DNA of 60,723 nt, the filler included, from Platydemus manokwari (lineage: Eukaryota), in assembly GCA_037951405.1 (NCBI GenBank). It is 5 parts of 5 records of this genome, joined end to end, with 100 filler letters (N's around TTAATTAATTAA, not from the genome) between each part and the next. Parts side by side here need not be neighbours in the genome. Positions count along the whole stretch, not along the records: positions 49,327 to 60,723 come from JBBMOY010704429.1; 4 more parts are not named here. One strand, written 5' to 3'. A program made the position numbers and the translations under genes. Under the pieces are notes generated by a model. It ran no database searches, was not told the origin of the DNA, and worked only from the letters and a program-made list of their open reading frames with translations. Numbering within the stretch: position 1 is the first letter of the stretch; the number at the start of each line of letters is the position of its first letter. Positions 49,327 to 60,723 of the stretch are shown piece by piece.

Positions 49327-49327
49327 A

Positions 49328-50614
49328 AAAGATTGGGATAAATTAGAACACTTATTGAAAAACCGAGATACAATCAAAAAAGCAGACTTTCTAATATCAG
49401 CTTCTCAGATACATAGAGAAGAATTCTATAAAAAATTCTTAGAGGATAATGCCGAAGTCATGCCTGAATTAAATACAGAAATATTAAAAGAAATTCTAGC
49501 ATATCTAGGAATGAAGGATTTTACAAGACTAATTCGAAATCTACCATCTGACGAAATCTATGATATCATAGAACATTTTACACAAGAAATACAAGAAGAG
49601 ATTATCTGTAAATTACCTTATTATAAAGCACAAGTATTAACAGAGGTATTATCATGCCCTACTGAAAGTGCAGGTAGAATGATACAAAAAGACTTTATTA
49701 CTGCTCATCCAGATTGGACTATCAACCAAGTCATCGAATTATTAAGAACGTATAAAACAAGGCATATACAAAAAGAACTATACGATATATATATAACTGA
49801 CCCTGACAAAAAACCAATCGGGAGAGTCAATCTAACCGCATTATTATGTAACGATAGGAACACTAAAATTTCCAATATTATGCTTACAGATTTCAAAAAA
49901 ATAGAAACTGGCTTAGGGCAAGAAGAAACGGCAATTCTATTCCGTAAATATGAGTTACTTTCTGCACCAGTAATAAATGAGAATCAACAAATGATAGGTG
50001 TAATATCATGTGACGATATTATGCACATTATACAAGAAGAAGCAGAAGAAGATCTATTACATCTAGGTAAAATATCAGAAAATGACTTGAATGCAGGTAT
50101 ATTTCATACATTTAAAAGAAGAATAGTATGGCTTTTTATTACTTTCTTTACAATAAATATAGCTTCTTTTGTAATAGGTTTTTTCAATGAAACACTCAAA
50201 AAGTCTGTAACAATATCAATTCTAATGCCAATTATTGCAGCAATGGCTGGTAATAGCGGAATGCAATCAGCTACTATAGCAATACGCGCACTTGTAACAG
50301 GGCAATTATCGTATATAAACTATAGAAGAGTATTATTAAAAGAACTATTAATAGGTCTATTCAATGGAATAGCATTATCTATATGCATATTTACCACAAT
50401 ACTATTAAGATACCATAATGTAGAGATAGAATTCATTTTTGTATTCTCAATGCTATTTGTTGTAACAATCGCAACAATTGTTGGATCGGCTATTCCAATC
50501 ATAATCCATAGATTGGGTGGTGACCCAGCACTTTCATCTTCTGTCATCACAAGTTCTATCACAGATATCCTATCCTTTCTAATATTGTTATCAGTCGCTT
50601 CAATTATCCTATAA
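49328..50614 (+). CDS. mgtE: Bacterial magnesium transporter MgtE, 5'-truncated by the contig edge
   Basis: Intronless frame open from 49328. MgtE N-domain, ESAGRMI, tandem CBS domains (YELLSAPVINENQQMIGVISCDDI), EEAEED, RIVWL, MPIIAAMAGNSGMQSAT, DPALSSSVITSSITDI. Confidence 0.95.
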   Translation, partial: KDWDKLEHLLKNRDTIKKADFLISASQIHREEFYKKFLEDNAEVMPELNTEILKEILAYLGMKDFTRLIRNLPSDEIYDIIEHFTQEIQEEIICKLPYYKAQVLTEVLSCPTESAGRMIQKDFITAHPDWTINQVIELLRTYKTRHIQKELYDIYITDPDKKPIGRVNLTALLCNDRNTKISNIMLTDFKKIETGLGQEETAILFRKYELLSAPVINENQQMIGVISCDDIMHIIQEEAEEDLLHLGKISENDLNAGIFHTFKRRIVWLFITFFTINIASFVIGFFNETLKKSVTISILMPIIAAMAGNSGMQSATIAIRALVTGQLSYINYRRVLLKELLIGLFNGIALSICIFTTILLRYHNVEIEFIFVFSMLFVVTIATIVGSAIPIIIHRLGGDPALSSSVITSSITDILSFLILLSVASIIL

Positions 50615-50633
50615 ATAAAATCATATAGAGCAA

Positions 50634-51090
50634 ATGAATATAAAAAAAATAAATATCAATATCTTCAAAAAACATAGTCAACAGTCTAATACTAAAAAAT
50701 TTCGTTATAGAAATACTGTGCTATTCAAGATATTACTTATTTTTGTAAATTCATTAGTCAAAATGGTACGTAATGATGGGTTCGAATATGCAGGGTATAT
50801 GACATTTCTAATGATATTATCAACTTTCCCTTTCATCTTTCTGCTTACAGCACTTGCTGGTTTTGTCACATACGTTTTTGGTACAAGCATAATCAATATG
50901 TCAGTTATTATAGACATAATTTTCTCAGGGTTACCAGACGCTACTTCAAGAAGTTTGAAACCTTATATATCAGCAATAGTGAATATCCCTAATATCAACT
51001 TGATAAAAATGGTGATTGCAGGTGCATTATGGACAAGTTCTTCATTAGTCGAAGGAATAAGAACTATTCTCAATAAAATATATGCTAATG
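50634..51090 (+). pseudogene. yihY: Bacterial YihY/BrkB-family membrane protein, C-terminally truncated
   Basis: Starts 19 bp after the mgtE stop. DGFEYAGYMTFLMILSTFPF and GALWTSSSLVEGIRTILNKIY resemble Rickettsiales YihY. Similarity stops after NKIY; the ORF tail to 51182 appears to be read-through into non-homologous DNA. Confidence 0.85.
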
Positions 51091-51398
51091 CTTATAGTTC
51101 TATTACCAGAGAGAGACTGCCAAGAATTTGTTTGTACATATTTTATATTTCAGAAATATCTATCTATACACAATCTAGATAATACTTCTATTTTGGCATG
51201 AATGTACCTAATATGGTAATTCCATGAAAATTACTTATGAATAGAACTTTAAAATAAGACATTCTTAAAAGCTTGAAAAATCATTAATGTAAAATATTTT
51301 TGAAATAAACTGTCATTTGATTTTTATGGTCATGGGGAATAATATCGAATGTACCGACTCATTCAAAGTTCAGTTAATATAGATTTTTTTGCTTATAG

Positions 51399-54300
51399 GT
51401 TGGGAAAAACCACAGTGGTTTGCTGTAAATGAAAACGAGAGAGGATATAAACCAAGTTTCAGAAGATCAAATTGGTTTAGTGCATTGGAGCGAGAATGTA
51501 AAAGTGTTGTTGAAAATTTGGGATTAATTGATTTAACATCATTCGCCAAATTTATTATTTCCGGAACAAATTCAGAAGAGTATTTGGATAAGGTAACTGC
51601 AAACAATATTCCACAAATTGGGAACACGTGTATCACACATCTGCTCACACCAAGAGGTCGTGTTTATTCAGAATTAACTCTCACTAAAATAGAGGAAAAC
51701 AAATTTATCGCTATTACTGGAGCTGGTTCAGAATTTCATGACTTATGGTGGTTGGAGAATAAAGCTCGATTACATGGATATTCAGATTCGGTGAAATTCG
51801 AAAATATTACTGATAAAACTGGTGTTTTAGGAATAGCTGGTCCTAAATCAAGAGAATTCTTGCAACCATTGGTAAATACTGATTTGACTGCAGATGGATT
51901 TAAATTTCTGCAACATCGGAAAGCAGAAGTTTTTGGAATCCCTGTTAGCTTAATTCGCATTAGTTATACCGGTTTGTTGTATTTTATTTAAATATTTATA
52001 AGGTTAATGAGTTGATGTATGTATATAATTATTATTTAATAATAATAGTAAGAATAACTACTTGTACATTTAGCGTATATATTATCAATTCAATCTTGCA
52101 TGTGAACCAATAACATATCCTTGTCCTGTCCTTCTCAATGAATTGCTCTTTGAAACAGGAATTATTATAATAATATCAAATAATTGTTAATTTTGGAATT
52201 GATCAAATTTAAAAGTTCTACTCTATCCTAAATCAAATTCCTTTCTTATATTGATCCGCACTGGTTAAAAGCAAACGTTTTTGTTTAAAATAATATTTAT
52301 TTTAATACACTTTACATATGATATCAATTAAAATCACCACAAGGCACAAACTCAGTTAATAAATGTCACTGAATAGTATTGATAAATTATAATAATATAA
52401 AAGAAATATAAAACAAAGAAAATATCGAATTAGAAAATAATACATAAGGAATGACACCCTTAGCGAATTCTAAATAGTTACTGCTAACTATCAAATTTAG
52501 AGAATTATACTAATCTTGCTCTCTTTGAAAATATATACAATTTTATTACGAAGAAAACTGACTCAATGGGATTGTATTTTTCACATTAATTATTAGACCA
52601 ATGTTACAACTGAACAATTCGAGCCAGTTCAAGGAAACATTGTAACTACTTTACAATCGTTTATCGAGAAATTTGGCCAGTAGAATTTATAATCCAGAAG
52701 CGTGAGTTCCAGTTATTAAGCAATTTTATTCATTGTTAAAATCAATTTAATAATTTTTCTACACCGTAAAAATTCTAATTGAACTTCTTTCAACTAGAAT
52801 ATTCCTAAAAATTACATTCAGATCAACTTAAAATATTTAATAATAGTGGTTACTAGGCAATTAGGCCTAAAACCCAATAAAATCAACAATCAGAACTCTA
52901 AGACATCTCAAATACTTTGAATTCTATCAATATAGAACCACAAATAGTTTTAAATAAAGCGAATTTGTCAAAAATAATTGTCATAAATATTTTTATTTTA
53001 CTTTATTGTACCTCAATAAAATTTGATTGTATTTCATTGATTGTATGACGAATAATAACAATCGCATATTATTTAAATAAAATTATATGTTCTATTTATT
53101 GATTTATAATTCAACATCATATCCTGTTTATAATATACATACACCTTTTGGATTCAGGTGTACTTAATTAATATTATTAATGAAAGTTAATTAGAGCTCG
53201 ACCCATTTACTTCAAATTATATTAATTAATTCGCATATAATATTCAATTTATTTTGATCCATATTATATTAAATCCAAAGACTAGCAAATCCAAACAATT
53301 TTTGATAATTTTCCAAATTGGTTAAGTTTGAAAATAGGGAAGAAATAATTTGTTAAATTAATATAATTCATCAATCATTTTTAATGAAATAAAATGTCCT
53401 TGAAATGCATGTAAATAACCGCAATTATCATAAATCAATATTTATTTGTAGTATTAGGGTTTGGAATAATTAATTTTATTGAATTTGTAGTTTGAATATT
53501 CACTATAATTAATTAAGTGAAAATCGTTTTTTTACAAGTATATTTTATTTTAATACAATCTAATACATGAAATCAGCTTAATCAATAATTAATGTTAAAA
53601 AATTTAATCATTAAATACAACATGAGTCTAATGCGACGAATACCACCAAAACGGAAATAATCTTTATCCAAAATTGACTGTGATTAAAATGAAATTAATT
53701 TTTCATTTCGAATAGATGTTATGAATTTTTTATTTTATTCTTATTTCACGTTTATCAATTTCTATTATGTCCTTTTATCTTAATAATTTATGCGTATATA
53801 TACAAAATTATATTATGATCAACAATTATTATAATATTTGTATTAGTCACGTGATTGCTTATTTTAATATTCAGTTATTTGACATTGTTTTTGAATATGC
53901 ATTCACTATAACTGTTACTGTATTAATTAGATCATATATGACACAAATTAAATTAATAATCCTCAAATAGAAATTTATTAATACCGATGTAGTATTAAAT
54001 AAAGTGTTTTGTAGAAAATTTGAGTCCTGGAGTTGAATTATAAGTCTATTTAATTTGCTTCTGTCCTTTCTCTATTTGAATAGTATTTTAACTGCGTGAT
54101 TAAATACTTAATTTGTTTAAATACGATTGCCTGAAGTTATTTTTCGTTGAAATTTTTCACATTCCTGTGACAACTGGCATGGTTGTTTTGGAGATTTAAC
54201 AACTTTTTAAAATTCATTGTAGTATAAACATACGAATCCTTTCTAAAAATAGTTTTGTTTTTTATTTTTAAATGTTAACTGGTGTTTATTTTTTCTGTTT

Positions 54301-57300
54301 GATTAACCTGTTTGTTAGACGCAAATTATTTCAACACTTGAGAACTATTTTTTATTAGTACTAACTTAAATTTGCGATAATAATTCGTTCAAAATTAGCA
54401 AGAGAGAAGTTATATTTAAAATTTATTATTATTATTTCTAGTTACGTAACAAATTTCAATATAGAACTAAATTCATCGTGAATTGACTATTTCAACCTGG
54501 CTAATTTATTTTTATCGTAATTGTGATTAATTTTATTTTATATCATTAGCTTAATTTTTTTTCAGGTATAATAATAAATTTTGAATAACTTTGTTATTTT
54601 ACTGAAATACTTATCGGTAATTTAATTTTAATCTATCGATAAGTTTAACTAAATAACAACACGAAACAGGTACACCAAGTGTAAAAGTATAGTTCTCACT
54701 TTAAAATGATTAACAAAATTTAAAGAATATATTTCATTAAAAGTTATTTAATATATGATTTAGTTAATATCTAATTTATAGAGATTTATTCAAAAATGTA
54801 TTAGGAGAACTTGGTTGGGAAATATACTGTCCAATGGAGAGGCTGAAAGAACTGTTTAGTAAATTGCAGGACCATGGAAAACATTTCAAACTCATGAATT
54901 TTGGTGGGTATGCAATGAATTCTTTGCGAATCGAAAAAGGTTTCCGGATGTGGGGAAATGATGTTAGTAAAATATTTGATGTCAGAACTTTTAATTTTCT
55001 TTATATATATGTGTGTAAGTGGTTCTACAGAAAATCACACCCAAACAAAACCTGTGAGAATCAGTTGAATATTTAAAAATAACATTCACTGTATAGCAAT
55101 ACATCCTGTCTCTATAAATTTAAATTCTTTCTATAAATTTAAATCAAAGTGCGAGTTTTTATTGTTAAGAATTTTTATAAAACAGAAAACTGTTGCGAAG
55201 TAGGTCGAATATTTGAAGAATTCCAGGATATATTAATTAAATGTAAGTCATTTTCATTTTTAATTGAGAAATTTAAATCAACTAGAAGTATTGACAAAAA
55301 AGTACAAGACAAAATGGATGATACTTTTTCCAACAGTCATTTAAGAATATTAGCATTTGAAAATCTTCGGTTCATCGCATTCTTAAAATGAATTTGGATC
55401 TCAAATGTTATCACTTTTTTTTGCTTCAGCAACTCATAAGTAACGGTCCTGATGTATGACTGAACTTCACAATAAGATCCCGAAGCTAACTGATAAAATG
55501 ATTTGGACAGATGACTGCAAGTCTTATCTTAATGAATCACTTTATAAATATTTAATGATCAGTTAAAATCAAAATATCCTTTATGTGAAATTCACGAATC
55601 ATTAGCTTTAAGGCGGGCATTTTGGTGCAGCAGATTATTACCTGCTTATTTACCTGCTTATAGTCCTAATGACAAAAATTAATTTTCCATACTTCAATAC
55701 ATGTTTGTAGACCATGTATTATTCGAAGTATGGCCTGGAAGATGGAGCAATGCTGCATTTTACTGACACATCATGAGCTATTTGAACCATAACTTTCCAA
55801 ATTGTTGAATTGATCTCCGAGAACATTTTTTAGAGTGTACTCCAACATCATTAAACTTTACGTTATTTAATATTTTCCTCTGAGGTCTTATTAATGAAGT
55901 ATATCAGAGCCATATTCAAAATTTAGATTGACTTGAAAATAAAATTTACGGTATATCATGACGTTGATGAAAGGCATTGTAAAAGGTATGTTCTCGAACT
56001 GTTGAGAAGCGAATTCATCTTCGCATTAATGAAAATAGTGGATTTGAAAATAACATTTGAAAGTTGGTTTGTGGGTTGTGTTGTTGGACACTAAACTATA
56101 ATGTGCATAATATTATGATGATTGAAATTCAAAATTGATTTTACATGTGATATTCTATTTATTTCTTTAAACAAAAGCATATTTTTACACGTCTTGATAT
56201 TCATGCAAAGATTTATATTTAACTTTTAATATTTATCTCAGTTTTATCAAACGATTGAATCTATTTCTCATTAAATTTAACTCAAAGGTTTCGTTTAATC
56301 TACGAAAAATTGAAAATCTTTTGTTTAGGAAAGCTTTTCATTTATGTCTGTATTTGATTCGTGTCATTATAGCCATTTTGAAAGCATATTTTATTTGATA
56401 TTTCTCAATGACAAATCAAGGCAGGTTGCTATCTCGAATTGACATTACAGCACTGTTATGACTTCATTATATAGCTGAATTATTCTTTACATATCCTAAA
56501 ATCATTTAATTTTTATTTCATTTTATAGATTTATAAGTTCTCAAGGAATACACTCGGACGACATCAATAATTAATATATAAATAATATTAAGATCAGGAG
56601 TGGTATCGATCATGTATTGCAAGAATATTTGCGTAGATTTATTGATTTCTAAATAAGAAATAGTTTAAGCTTAACAAAAAAACATTTGAGTTAAACTAAT
56701 TTTTCGATTAATGAATTCGGAATTTTAGTGTAGTGATATTTTTATTTTCATTTCATTCCCTATATACGATAATATTAATTTTACGATCTGATTTTATCGG
56801 AATAAAGTTTTTATTAAAATTTATTTCTATTTAGATGACAATGGATACAAATCCGATTGATGCTGGTTTAGGATTTTTTGTGAAACATAAAAAGGTGTTT
56901 TCAATATATTGACATATGATTTTTCGGTAGCTTAAAAGACAAATTATTACCGTTTGTCTTTTATTTCTTAAATTTTTGTATAACAAATAATTAAAAAAAC
57001 AATATCATAAATAATTAAATATTTTAATCCTTATTTAATAAAAATTGTTCATATCAGTCAATGAAAATGATTTACATCGCGCACTTCTGACTAATTCAAT
57101 AAAACCTGTAACTCGATCTTTTTATATAGTGTGAGCTTTGTTCCAGTTTAATCATGTTATTCCTTGTCTTTCCTCTTTCTTTTTATATTCAGGTACGAGA
57201 TCTGGACAGGGAATTTCATATATATTGTCCATTAGTTCGAGACTTCTTAGTCCCTCTGGTTCAGAATGAATGTGAACTCGGAGATAGGATCAATGGCTAA

Positions 57301-59063
57301 ATGTAGAATTTATTGTCGACAAGCTGACGATAATGAGATGACAAACAATTTGATTGTATAAGACCCTGTGTTTATGATTTTATTAATATCCAAACGTTAG
57401 ATAATAAAAAAAAACCAGAATAATAGCAATCGTATCGATTATTATAACAAAATATTATTAAGAAACGAACACTCGATTAATTTTTTGATATTAAACAAAA
57501 CATTGTGGAAATGTTATCATTTTGCGAATCATTTTGAAAAATAATAACCAATCACAAGTAAGTAGTAAATAACTGAATAGTGGAAGGACAAGATCTAGTT
57601 TTGAGTAAAATTTATATGAAGGAATGAAATATTGGTTTATCACGAATAAATCATTTTTAGTGTAGTCTTTCGCTGATTACTCATGATATTAACCACTAAT
57701 AACTGAATATAATAAAAAAAATTATATAATTAATTTTGTTAATTGGTTTAGACTGTCTGAAAGTCTGTAGTTATATTTGGAATAATCGTTTGTTGTATTT
57801 TTTCACTTAAAATTTTTCCAGAAGAAATTTTTCCAAATAAATAAATGATAAATATATGATATGATAAATATAAGATATGATAAATATAAGATATGATAAA
57901 TATCTGAAATGAATTTTTTTAATGGGTTGTTGCAGTTATGTGTGTTTAGATGGGATTAAATTTCTTGTATATGTGGTAAATATAATTCAGAAGCATATTG
58001 TATGTCGGTTTTGGTGTTTGAAAATGTTATTTATTTATTTTTTATTCTTATTTCGATATATGTATTGATTGAGTGCTTTGCCATATTTTATGTGATGATT
58101 AATTGAGTTCTACAAGTTTCTAAATAAATGATATACTATTTCATTAAAGTTGAATAAATCATTGTTCAGTAGATTTGGAACCACAGTTAGAACACAAAGA
58201 CTAAATTAATAGTCTAAATAATTTAATAATGAACTGACAATCCATTTCCATAGCATGCTAAATTATCGTAATTAATTAAAATATTTGATATTAATGCTAA
58301 ATCCAATAATTCTCTTTAAATTTCCTTTATCTTACTCCTAACAAATTCGTGTTCCTGCAAGGCCATCAAGAAATTTAATTAGGTTTAAGGTTAAAATTTA
58401 TATTTATAACTTTATACCAAGTTAAAAGCAAAATTGCTAATAAAAGGTAATAAAGAAAATAAGATCAAGTCATTTTCTATGTTGTACCACTGGCTTGAAA
58501 TCTATTTTTAGTCACTACGACAATACCCATAAATTTATGTGATGACTACTACAATAATAAGTCTATTCTCACTGTTTAGAATTTAGAAAGCAAAATTTAC
58601 GAAGATACTAAAAATTATTATTCTTGTGACATATTTGAATTAAATGAATTAAATTTAGGAGATTTTTAGGCTCTAATTTATTTATTATTTGATTTCAAAT
58701 AACTGAAATTCTTCTTAAGTACTTAAATAAAAAAATTCAAAGGGTTCTTAAAGAATATCATTAAATAAACTATACAGAATTTTGCAATACATTCATCAAA
58801 TGTAAAATTTCATTTTAGGACCATTTTTTTTAACTTAAGCCTTGATTTTAAATCAATTTTTAGTCTTAACGCAATTGTTATTTTAGCACTTATTTAGTAA
58901 GATAACTCAAACAAATTAAATATTTCAGAAAGCCGATTTTATTGGTAAATCAGCAATATGTGAGATTTTAAGCAAACCTCTCAAGCGAAAATTAGTAATC
59001 TTGCAAATTGACACCAAAGACGTCGATGCAGATGGTGATGAAACCGTTTTTCTAAAGGACGAA
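51399..59063 (+). CDS. DMGDH: Dimethylglycine dehydrogenase (GcvT-like domain part), incomplete at both ends. Exons 51399-51971, 54805-54962, 56835-56894, 58929-59063
   Basis: GWEKPQWF..YKPSFRRSNWF, IDLTSFAKF, HLLTPRGRVYSELT, ITGAGSEFHDL, RISYTGELGWEIY, FGGYAMNSLRIEKGFRMWG, DTNPIDAGL, ADFIGK, RKLV. GT-AG junctions and phases are consistent. Confidence 0.92.
55149..56060 (+). mobile_element. Decayed Tc1/mariner-superfamily transposase in a DMGDH intron
   Basis: RVFIVKNFYKTE..VGRIF (N-terminal HTH-like), IWTDDCKSYLN (cf. FSDE..F.L), EDGAMLHF (cf. QQDGA..H), LENKIY and C-terminal KRIHL..NENSGFE; many stops. Confidence 0.7.
57844..57903. repeat. Short tandem repeat, ~3.5 x 17 bp (ATGATAAATATAAGAT-like)
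   Basis: Direct inspection. Confidence 0.8.
58651..58830 (+). repeat. Dispersed AT-rich repeat, copy B (see 15865-16045)
   Basis: Direct sequence similarity. Confidence 0.85.
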
Positions 59064-59401
59064 GTTAGTCATAGCTATTATTTTTCGAAAGTGTGATTTT
59101 CATACAAAAGAATCCTGATAAATTTTCAAAATATTGTTTTTATTATTAAAATTCACCTGAAACCCAATAATTGCTCTCAATATATTCTAAAATTATAATT
59201 ATTAAAAATAACCAAATTTTCAAAATTATTTCACAAAATTGTAGAGAATAACATTATAAGCAATCATTCAATGGCCTTCTGAAAAAATGTTTCATTTTTA
59301 AATTTAGGTTTCATGCAATGGATTATTGATCAAAATATTGAGAGTTCCGTGCAATTATCTCTCTAAAAAAGCGCATTGTAATTGTTGAGTGTTAAGAAAT
59401 C

Positions 59402-59712
59402 TTCCAAAAGAAAAACGAATTTGCACCTTGGATCCCTTGTTTCAGCACTTTAAGCATTTGTATGCCTTGACAACTGAACAGGCATTTCAACCATAGTTGA
59501 CTTAGATGAAAAACGATATTTGGAAATAGGGACACAATTACACACAACATAAATAAGGATTGACTAATCATGGACATACTAAAACTAATAACCCCAATGG
59601 AAACATGAGAAATCAAGGTTGAAATCAAAATGTGATCTCGAGCATAAAGATGGTCAACTGCTAGTTTGGAAACCAATTTTTGGTTGCGTTTTTTGAGACA
59701 TTGTATTGACTT
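59402..59712 (+). repeat. Dispersed repeat, copy B (see 40203-40592)
   Basis: Direct sequence similarity, strongest over the first ~90 bp. Confidence 0.75.
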
Positions 59713-60403
59713 TTAGAATAGTACTGATTAGTACGTGTGACAGTTGAAAGCCAAGTTTTTGTTGTATTTCTGTGATACTTTGTGAGTCGTACTGATTAGA
59801 ATGTGAGTTAGAAATAAAGCTCGTGACCTTCAATTTTTGGAGTCAGCAATTATTTGACTATTCAGAATTATTTTTATCACCATAGAATAGTGCTTTCTTC
59901 TTTACGCAGAAAATCTTTCAATGGGCCTGAAATATATCATTAACCTGATGGAAATGAAACACATTTAAAAATGTTGTAAAAAAAATTTCACATTTGGTAA
60001 CGAAAAATATTATTTTTATATTTTTAATTTGAAAATTTTTAGAGATCAATCAAAAATTTAATTGAAAAAACATATTTCAAATTAATAAATAAATTAAATC
60101 ACCTATCGATTGTTGTGAAAAGCTTTTTTAATTGATGATTAATAAATACAATTGCTATTCAAAATGGTGTCTACAATCTAATAATTAATGATTGTCAATT
60201 ATTTGTTCAATATATTTTCGTCCAAAAAACAATAGACCGGTAATTGGCATTTTGTCAGTTATTTTCTTCTTTAAATGTCGAATAAATTTGAAATATTTTC
60301 TATGCAATTTTATTGAATATATTTCGATCAATATTTAATCGATCTCCACCTGGAAGCAGCCTTCATAGAATTATTTGACTATTTAGGAATGATTAAATTG
60401 ATC

Positions 60404-60404
60404 A

Positions 60405-60443
<39 letters not shown>

Positions 60444-60487
60444 TGTAACAATAATAATAATAATAATAATTGCAATAATAATAATAA
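60404..60487. repeat. (AAT)n microsatellite
   Basis: AAT run with few interruptions. Confidence 0.95.
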
Positions 60488-60723
60488 AGAATAAAAACCG
60501 CAATATTAGAAATATTTATGTCTTAAATCTTTTATTTAAAAAACTATTCATAATAAGCGATTTTCTATTTTTAAAATAATTAAAAATATTAAAATTAATT
60601 AAAGTTGTTTTATTAATTATCATTGAATTATATTAATAATTAAAAATTTTATGAATTATTGTCTCTTGGAATATTTTCCATTCAATTTTCCGTGCCACAT
60701 TTATCTATTAATGTTCTTATCAT

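What the first reader, a model, noticed from the sequence alone, without database searches (positions are those of the whole stretch)
49327..51400. Rickettsiales-like mgtE-yihY block joined without a gap to DNA upstream of a host DMGDH exon
Seen: two tightly packed intronless bacterial genes. mgtE has no lesion; yihY is cut after ...RTILNKIY (~51085); a spliced animal DMGDH internal exon begins ~310 bp later with no N gap. The rest of the contig carries repeats shared with the other host contigs. Inference: either a recent endosymbiont-to-host insertion in a DMGDH intron or a chimeric join. Either way it points to an AT-rich Rickettsiales-like bacterium associated with this animal. The Rickettsiales assignment rests on recalled YihY motifs.
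Basis: partly seen in the sequence, partly recalled or inferred. Interest (0 to 1): 0.75.

Follow-up and report, generated by a model that had tools for sequence, protein, structure and literature searches.

The report
Rickettsiales symbiont DNA abutting host intron
A 1.76-kb piece of a so far undescribed Rickettsiales-type intracellular bacterium (a magnesium-transporter gene plus half of the next gene) sits at the end of an animal contig next to a DMGDH intron, but the only public run I could check does not cover the joint, so it looks more like an assembly join than a proven gene transfer.

Summary
Positions 49327-51083 are bacterial: mgtE (open from the contig edge to its stop at 50614, about 22 codons lost at the edge), a 19-nt spacer, and the first 150 codons of yihY/brkB. 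Homology to bacterial relatives stops exactly at 51083/51084. From 51399 on there are properly spliced DMGDH exons.

The bacterial block is 88% identical in DNA, and 96% in MgtE protein, to a Logan contig with the order fliE-mgtE-yihY-SDR-ybaB-dnaX. dN/dS is 0.03, and the window's own branch shows no relaxed constraint. So this is DNA of a living bacterium or a very recent transfer.

The MgtE tree places it in a fully supported clade whose named members are all Rickettsiales. The nearest named genome is Ca. Xenolissoclinum, at only 46%.

The joint is not supported. In the one available run, the bacterial contig ends at 51071. Nothing covers 51072-51090. The host contig fits the window only from 51139, and its 36 letters to the left of that differ from the window.

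My reading: real symbiont DNA (near certain); the join to the DMGDH intron is more likely an assembly chimera (about 0.6) than a real, unfixed insertion (about 0.35).

The parts
49327..50614 (+). mgtE (magnesium transporter). The 5' end is cut by the contig edge (about 22 codons missing). Otherwise the frame is open to the stop at 50612-50614.
   Evidence: TIGR00400 equivalog above cutoff. 96% aa identity to P0001. 88% nt identity to L001. dN/dS 0.031.
50615..50633 (+). 19-nt bacterial intergenic spacer, the same length as in relative L001 (2971-2989).
50634..51083 (+). First 150 codons of yihY/brkB (the relatives' gene is 302-312 aa). Homology ends at 51083.
   Evidence: (profile 6-111 of 259). 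dN/dS 0.155 against L001.
51084..51138 (.). 55 nt of unassigned origin between the end of bacterial homology and the start of the host contig of run X1. It carries most of the 33-codon read-through of the yihY frame, which runs on to the stop at 51180-51182.
   Evidence: No match in bacterial loci or in the rest of the piece. Positions 51072-51090 have zero depth, and X1 record 3 fits only from 51139, with 36 unfitting letters before it.
51139..51398 (+). 3' end of a host intron, with a polypyrimidine tract and AG at 51397-51398.
   Evidence: Read from the sequence. Covered by X1 record 3 at depth 9.03.
51399..51971 (+). Internal exon of the host DMGDH gene (GCV_T domain, rat DMGDH residues 462-652).
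   Evidence: PF01571, 3.7e-37. (E 5.4e-58 to 4p9s). Donor GT at 51972-51973.
51972..54804 (+). Host intron, 21-30% GC, containing high-copy repeats.
   Evidence: (depth spikes of 58, 65, 125 and 727).
54805..54962 (+). Next DMGDH exon (ELGWEIYCP...FRMWGND), spliced in phase 1. AG at 54803-54804 and GT at 54963-54964.
   Evidence: (PF01571, profile 199-242).

Best explanation
Positions 49327-51083 are genuine DNA of an AT-rich, obligately host-associated Rickettsiales bacterium. It belongs to an undescribed lineage whose close relatives carry flagellar genes and the gene order fliE-mgtE-yihY-SDR-ybaB-dnaX. This bacterium lives in or with the sequenced animal.

Its attachment to the DMGDH intron is most likely an assembly product. 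A low-coverage symbiont contig and a host contig both ended here and were joined, with a short unsupported filler (51084-51138) between them. It is probably not a fixed chromosomal insertion.

Shown: bacterial origin, purifying selection, Rickettsiales placement, the host gene structure, and the lack of support for the joint in the one available run. Inferred: that the join arose in assembly.
For: - Bacterial identity and synteny.
- The breakpoint is sharp at 51083/51084.
- Selection: mgtE dN/dS is 0.031 at dS 0.62. Window-branch codon changes are 30 synonymous to 5 nonsynonymous, against 39 to 4 on the L001 branch. There is no sign of decay.
- Taxonomy: the best GTDB matches are Ca. Xenolissoclinum (46%), two Anaplasmataceae MAGs (42%) and 'Rickettsiaceae bacterium H1' (44%). 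The clade has SH-aLRT 100. mgtE-yihY adjacency is shared with Xenolissoclinum.
- Joint, all: X1 record 2 lies on the window over its whole length and ends at 51071. The bin depth of 5.56 equals 177 x 6.16 / 196, so nothing covers 51072-51090. Record 3 fits only from 51139, and its first 36 letters do not fit the window. So the main host path of that run differs from the window to the left of 51139.
- The bacterial DNA is at the very end of the contig, so only one junction exists. Its depth falls towards the edge (about 2.4, 3.9, 6.2), as expected of a thinly covered symbiont.
- There is no other bacterial fragment in 51084-60723.
Against: - The X1 contig does not run on from 51071 into the rest of yihY, as a living symbiont's genome should, unless a coverage hole happens to lie there.
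- Bacterial depth (about 5.6 length-weighted) is within the range of the host contigs (4.1-10.9). This also fits a nuclear copy.
- Holes of 13-61 nt between X1 contigs occur inside undoubted host sequence as well, and the tool itself warns that a hole proves nothing.
- X1 is stored as contigs, which drop rare variants. I could not look at raw reads or at the assembly's own libraries.
- De Bruijn assemblers seldom join unrelated sequences without a shared k-mer.
Confidence: 0.58

Rival explanations
1. This is a real and very recent transfer of symbiont DNA into an intron of the host DMGDH gene. It would have inserted by non-homologous end joining with 55 nt of filler, and be heterozygous or polymorphic rather than fixed. 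The fragment would be a passive passenger, not a working host gene.
For: - Continuous sequence with no N.
- Bacterial k-mer depth is about 0.65 of the host depth and within the host range.
- The X1 bacterial contig stops 12 nt before the breakpoint and does not continue into the rest of yihY.
- The 36 unfitting letters of the host contig could be the empty allele.
- yihY is cut in mid-gene at a sharp point, as expected of a broken fragment.
- From general knowledge: nuclear insertions of Wolbachia and Rickettsia DNA are common in invertebrates.
Against: - No contig spans 51072-51090 in the only run. A branch connected to 1.7 kb of sequence at about half the host depth should have survived as a contig running through the joint.
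- Only one junction is available, and the bacterial part lies at the contig end.
- There are no lesions or relaxed selection at all, so at best the transfer is extremely young.
- The exact junction ORF is not on record in any other assembly.
Confidence: 0.35
2. The bacterial DNA does not belong to a symbiont of this animal. It comes from a Rickettsiales bacterium in some other eukaryote present in the sample (a parasite, a protist or food), and was joined to host DNA by the assembler.
For: - Rickettsiales infect protists as well as animals (PMC9352585, read).
- Low depth.
- No host-specific information is available.
Against: - The depth is close to that of the host nuclear genome.
- The bacterial contig of X1 is 100% identical to the window over 1367 nt, so the bacterium is reproducibly present with this host's DNA, if X1 is an independent library.
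Confidence: 0.07

Closest known systems
Candidatus Xenolissoclinum pacificiensis L6 (a Rickettsiales bacterium filed under Anaplasmataceae; intracellular symbiont of the tunicate Lissoclinum patella; PMC3851785)
   Same: It is the nearest named genome for MgtE (46% identity) and the sister in the tree (SH-aLRT 90). mgtE is directly followed by yihY. GC is about 31%.
   Different: Identity is only 46%, and both branches are long. The window's close relatives have fliE just upstream and flgD/flgE nearby, and fliE was not found next to mgtE in L004. The family-level placement is therefore open. Xenolissoclinum is itself a long-branch taxon that was left out of published phylogenomic analyses (PMC9352585).
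Unnamed bacteria in Logan assemblies SRR26937321 (L001) and SRR25018287/SRR25018289 (L002, L003)
   Same: They share the gene order mgtE-yihY and the 19-nt spacer. Identity is 88% nt and 96% MgtE aa for L001, and 77% nt and 82% aa for L002/L003.
   Different: In those contigs yihY is complete (302-312 aa) and is followed by SDR, ybaB and dnaX on purely bacterial contigs. In the window the homology stops at codon 150. Their hosts are unknown to me.
Nuclear insertions of Wolbachia or Rickettsia DNA in invertebrate genomes (symbiont-to-host lateral transfer; general knowledge)
   Same: A fragment of an intracellular alphaproteobacterium lies next to host intron DNA and is cut in mid-gene.
   Different: Accepted cases have junction-spanning reads, both flanks, and usually signs of decay. 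Here the joint is uncovered in the only run, one flank is missing, and the genes show no decay.

Membership tests
MgtE magnesium transporter (TIGR00400 / PF03448 + PF00571 + PF01769) | N-terminal domain, CBS pair and C-terminal membrane domain, scoring above the curated equivalog cutoff | tested here: met
   One search finds all three Pfam domains. One search gives 250.6 bits against a cutoff of 232.75, covering profile 20-447 of 450. Only the first ~20 residues are missing, at the contig edge.
YihY/BrkB inner-membrane protein (PF03631 / TIGR00765) | Full-length membrane domain of about 259 profile positions | tested here: not met
   Only profile positions 2-115 are present. Relatives have 302-312 aa covering 7-257. 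This is a 5' fragment of a family member, not a complete gene.
Order Rickettsiales | Phylogenetic placement inside Rickettsiales | tested here: met
   On the single gene MgtE, the window lies in an 11-row clade with SH-aLRT 100 whose named rows are all Rickettsiales. Caveats: one gene, long branches, shared AT bias, and the GTDB scan was limited by its peptide patterns.
Order Rickettsiales | 16S rRNA or multi-gene phylogeny; reduced genome of about 1-1.5 Mb; intracellular location | not testable with these tools
   Only 1.76 kb is in the window, and there is no rRNA. The two nearest MAG chromosomes are 1.1 and 1.4 Mb.
Symbiont-to-host nuclear insertion (lateral gene transfer) | Reads or contigs that cross the junction at host-like depth | tested here: not met
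   no contig of X1 covers 51072-51090, and the host contig departs from the window to the left of 51139. These are contigs only, so the result weakens the claim but does not exclude it.
Symbiont-to-host nuclear insertion (lateral gene transfer) | A second junction, or host DNA on both sides | not testable with these tools
   The contig ends inside mgtE at 49327.
Symbiont-to-host nuclear insertion (lateral gene transfer) | Neutral decay of the inserted copy relative to the living bacterium | tested here: not met
   The window branch has 30 synonymous to 5 nonsynonymous changes in mgtE, the same as the bacterial branch, and there are no stops or frameshifts.
Animal dimethylglycine dehydrogenase (DMGDH) | Aminomethyltransferase-type folate-binding domain that is closest to DMGDH, encoded in spliced exons | tested here: met
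   E 5e-58 to rat and human DMGDH, against 6e-13 to bacterial DMG oxidase. GT-AG introns restore the conserved ISYTG|ELGWE. SARDH and PDPR were not among the PDB matches, so orthology against them was not tested directly.

The most novel reading that the evidence does not exclude
This would be a very young insertion, still polymorphic and not yet decayed, of DNA from an undescribed flagellated Rickettsiales lineage into an intron of the animal's DMGDH gene. It would have been caught essentially at the moment of transfer, with 55 nt of filler at the joint and the empty allele still present in the population.
Probability: 0.3. Interest if true: 0.5.

Novelty: new member of a known kind. Interest (0 to 1): 0.3.

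Why it matters
The piece shows that this animal's sequencing sample carries a Rickettsiales bacterium. Its MgtE is no more than 46% identical to that of any genome in GTDB or NCBI. Its closest relatives, seen only in three other public runs, carry flagellar genes. A lineage like this bears on how host association and loss of motility evolved in the order.

For the host genome there is a practical consequence. This contig end should be flagged as possible symbiont contamination or a chimera, and should not be annotated as host genes. If the joint turned out to be real, it would be one more symbiont-to-host transfer, and an unusually fresh one. That kind of event is already well known.

Tried and rejected
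- Exact-sequence look-ups found nothing on record. I tried the junction ORF (182 aa), the partial MgtE and YihY products that X1's contigs would encode, and the DMGDH exon ORF. So I got no independent copy of the joint and no access to the unfitting 36 letters.
- A word search with the DMGDH exon was blank, because full-length proteins fall outside its length window. The Atlas search gave only the GCV_T family and no usable host taxon. Host identity remains unknown to me.
- The listing of cluster members gave no names for the MgtE relatives.
- The SRA accessions of the related contigs occur in no paper of the library.
- tblastx of 51084-60723 against seven bacterial loci found no further bacterial fragments. 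The 55-nt filler and the intron gave only chance matches of 11-15 nt.
- Seven host-side ORFs had no Pfam family, and there was no Rfam match. So no transposon or RNA gene explains the joint.
- I considered an old nuclear pseudogene and rejected it: dN/dS is 0.03 and the window branch is not relaxed.
- I considered sequencing-adapter remnants in the filler, by eye and from memory only. I did not test this computationally.
Full report
**What is there**

The piece (49327-60723, no N) begins inside a bacterial gene.

- **mgtE.** The frame is open from 49328 to a stop at 50612-50614. It carries MgtE_N, CBS and MgtE domains. It passes NCBIfam's equivalog model for the magnesium transporter MgtE, at 250.6 bits against a cutoff of 232.75, covering profile 20-447 of 450. 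About 22 codons are missing at the contig edge. There is no other lesion.
- **yihY/brkB.** After a 19-nt spacer, a yihY/brkB gene starts at 50634 (PF03631, profile 2-115 of 259).
- **Host DMGDH exons.** An exon at 51399-51971 lies downstream (AG at 51397-51398, GT at 51972-51973). It matches rat DMGDH residues 462-652 at E 5e-58. A second exon lies at 54805-54962. The phase-1 splice restores the conserved ISYTG|ELGWE.
- **Composition.** The introns are 21-30% GC and the bacterial block is about 30% GC, so composition does not separate the two.

**Where the bacterial part ends**

The closest relative is a 7-kb Logan contig (L001) with the gene order fliE-mgtE-yihY(312 aa)-SDR-ybaB-dnaX. A second lineage (L002, L003) has the same order, plus the atp operon, sodB and flgD/flgE.

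Window 49327-51083 aligns to L001 at 88.1% identity over 1757 nt, and to L002/L003 at 77%. The alignment stops exactly after ...AATAAAATATAT at 51083. Beyond that point the yihY frame reads through 33 unrelated codons to a stop.

No other bacterial fragment occurs in the remaining 9.6 kb. The 55 nt that follow the breakpoint match nothing I hold.

**Is the bacterial copy alive or decaying?**

| Comparison with L001 | dN/dS |
|---|---|
| mgtE (dS 0.62) | 0.031 |
| yihY fragment | 0.155 |

With L003 as outgroup, the window's own branch has 30 synonymous and 5 nonsynonymous codon changes in mgtE. The L001 branch has 39 and 4. Virtually all divergence therefore happened under bacterial purifying selection. 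The copy belongs to a living bacterium or was transferred very recently.

**What bacterium**

In the 5.8-billion-protein collection, nothing except the two Logan lineages exceeds 46% identity. A scan of one genome per GTDB species gave these best matches:

| Match | MgtE identity |
|---|---|
| Ca. Xenolissoclinum pacificiensis L6 | 46% |
| 'Rickettsiaceae bacterium H1' | 44% |
| Two Anaplasmataceae MAG chromosomes (1.1 and 1.4 Mb) | 42% |

All other alphaproteobacteria were at 38% or below.

In a maximum-likelihood tree of 63 MgtE sequences, the window groups with P0001 and P0002 (SH-aLRT 100). That group sits inside an 11-row clade (SH-aLRT 100) whose named members are all Rickettsiales. Xenolissoclinum is the sister at support 90.

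mgtE followed directly by yihY is shared with Xenolissoclinum, but not with the other three Rickettsiales loci.

Caveats: this is one gene, the branches are long, the AT bias is shared, and the scan depends on peptide patterns.

The flagellar genes in the relatives are compatible with Rickettsiales. Some Midichloriaceae and Rickettsiaceae keep them (PMC9352585). They do leave the family open.

**The joint**

Only one public run (X1) holds the stretch. It is kept as Logan contigs and has 94% of the sampled words. When laid on 49327-55200, it shows the following.

- **Bacterial contig.** Record 2 (1367 nt, depth 6.16, no mismatch) lies on the window over its whole length and ends at 51071. That is 12 nt before the breakpoint.
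- **Uncovered stretch.** The bin 50895-51090 has depth 5.56, which equals 177 x 6.16 / 196. So nothing at all covers 51072-51090.
- **Host contig.** Record 3 (2772 nt, depth 9.03) fits the window only from 51139 onward. Its first 36 letters do not fit. The main host path of that run therefore differs from the window to the left of 51139.
- **Two breakpoints.** The window has one at 51083/51084 and one at 51138/51139. The 55 nt between them are supported by neither side.
- **Depth.** Bacterial contigs have depths of about 2.4, 3.9 and 6.2 (length-weighted about 5.6). Host contigs have 4.1-10.9 (about 8.6). There is no large depth step.
- **Other holes.** Holes of 13-61 nt also occur inside undoubted host sequence, so the hole on its own is weak evidence.
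- **Not the same haplotype.** X1 differs from the window at 53555 and 53696-53697, so it is not simply the assembled haplotype.

**Weighing the readings**

- **Fixed insertion.** A contig should cross the joint at flank depth. None does, and the host contig goes elsewhere. This reading is disfavoured.
- **Heterozygous or polymorphic insertion.** This explains the alternative host letters (the empty allele) and the sub-host depth. However, the junction branch, anchored to 1.7 kb of sequence, should still have survived as a contig. It needs a chance hole at exactly this place.
- **Living symbiont plus a wrong join.** Two contig ends would have been bridged by gap filling or by low-stringency extension. 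This explains naturally why both contigs end here, why the filler is unsupported, why the bacterial part is at the contig end with falling depth, and why the genes show no decay. It does need the true symbiont path to have had a coverage gap just past 51071.

I therefore put the chimeric join at about 0.58, a real but unfixed recent insertion at about 0.35, and a bacterium from another eukaryote in the sample at about 0.07. Contigs cannot settle this. Raw reads or a PCR would.

**Comparison with what is known, and novelty**

The two genes are ordinary housekeeping genes. Symbiont DNA in invertebrate assemblies, whether as contamination or as true insertions, is a well-known phenomenon.

What is modestly new is the lineage. 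This is a Rickettsiales bacterium whose MgtE is at most 46% identical to any genome-represented species. Flagellated relatives appear in three other public runs.

I rate it a new member of a known kind, with moderate-to-low interest (0.3). The most novel reading that survives is a just-transferred, still polymorphic insertion into a DMGDH intron. I give it probability about 0.3, and it would deserve about 0.5 if true.

**Limits**

- The host's identity stayed coded or unknown.

Noticed in passing
L002:7707-8027, 18350-19559; L001:1027-1365: The close relatives of the window's bacterium carry flagellar genes: fliE directly upstream of mgtE, and flgD and a 1142-aa flgE-like gene nearby. They also have large ORFs (884 and 660 aa) with no Pfam family. 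This looks like an undescribed flagellated Rickettsiales lineage present in three other public runs (SRR26937321, SRR25018287, SRR25018289).
   Followed up: partly
window 54619-54814, 53835-54030, 53051-53246, 51875-52070: In run X1, summed contig depth jumps to 727, 125, 65 and 58 at these intron stretches, against about 9 for single-copy sequence. These are high-copy host repeats or low-complexity AT-rich DNA.
   Followed up: no
window 53555 and 53696-53697: The X1 host contig differs from the window by an A>G change and small TA/T insertions. The public run is therefore not the exact haplotype or individual that was assembled, or the assembly has small errors here.
   Followed up: no
window 60387-60485 and 57840-57903: There is an (AAT)n microsatellite of about 100 nt, and three tandem copies of a 16-nt unit (ATGATAAATATAAGAT-like), both in host non-coding DNA.
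   Followed up: no
L004:3570-5737: Among the four nearest GTDB Rickettsiales loci, only Ca. Xenolissoclinum pacificiensis keeps yihY directly downstream of mgtE, as in the window. The two Anaplasmataceae MAGs and 'Rickettsiaceae bacterium H1' do not.
   Followed up: partly
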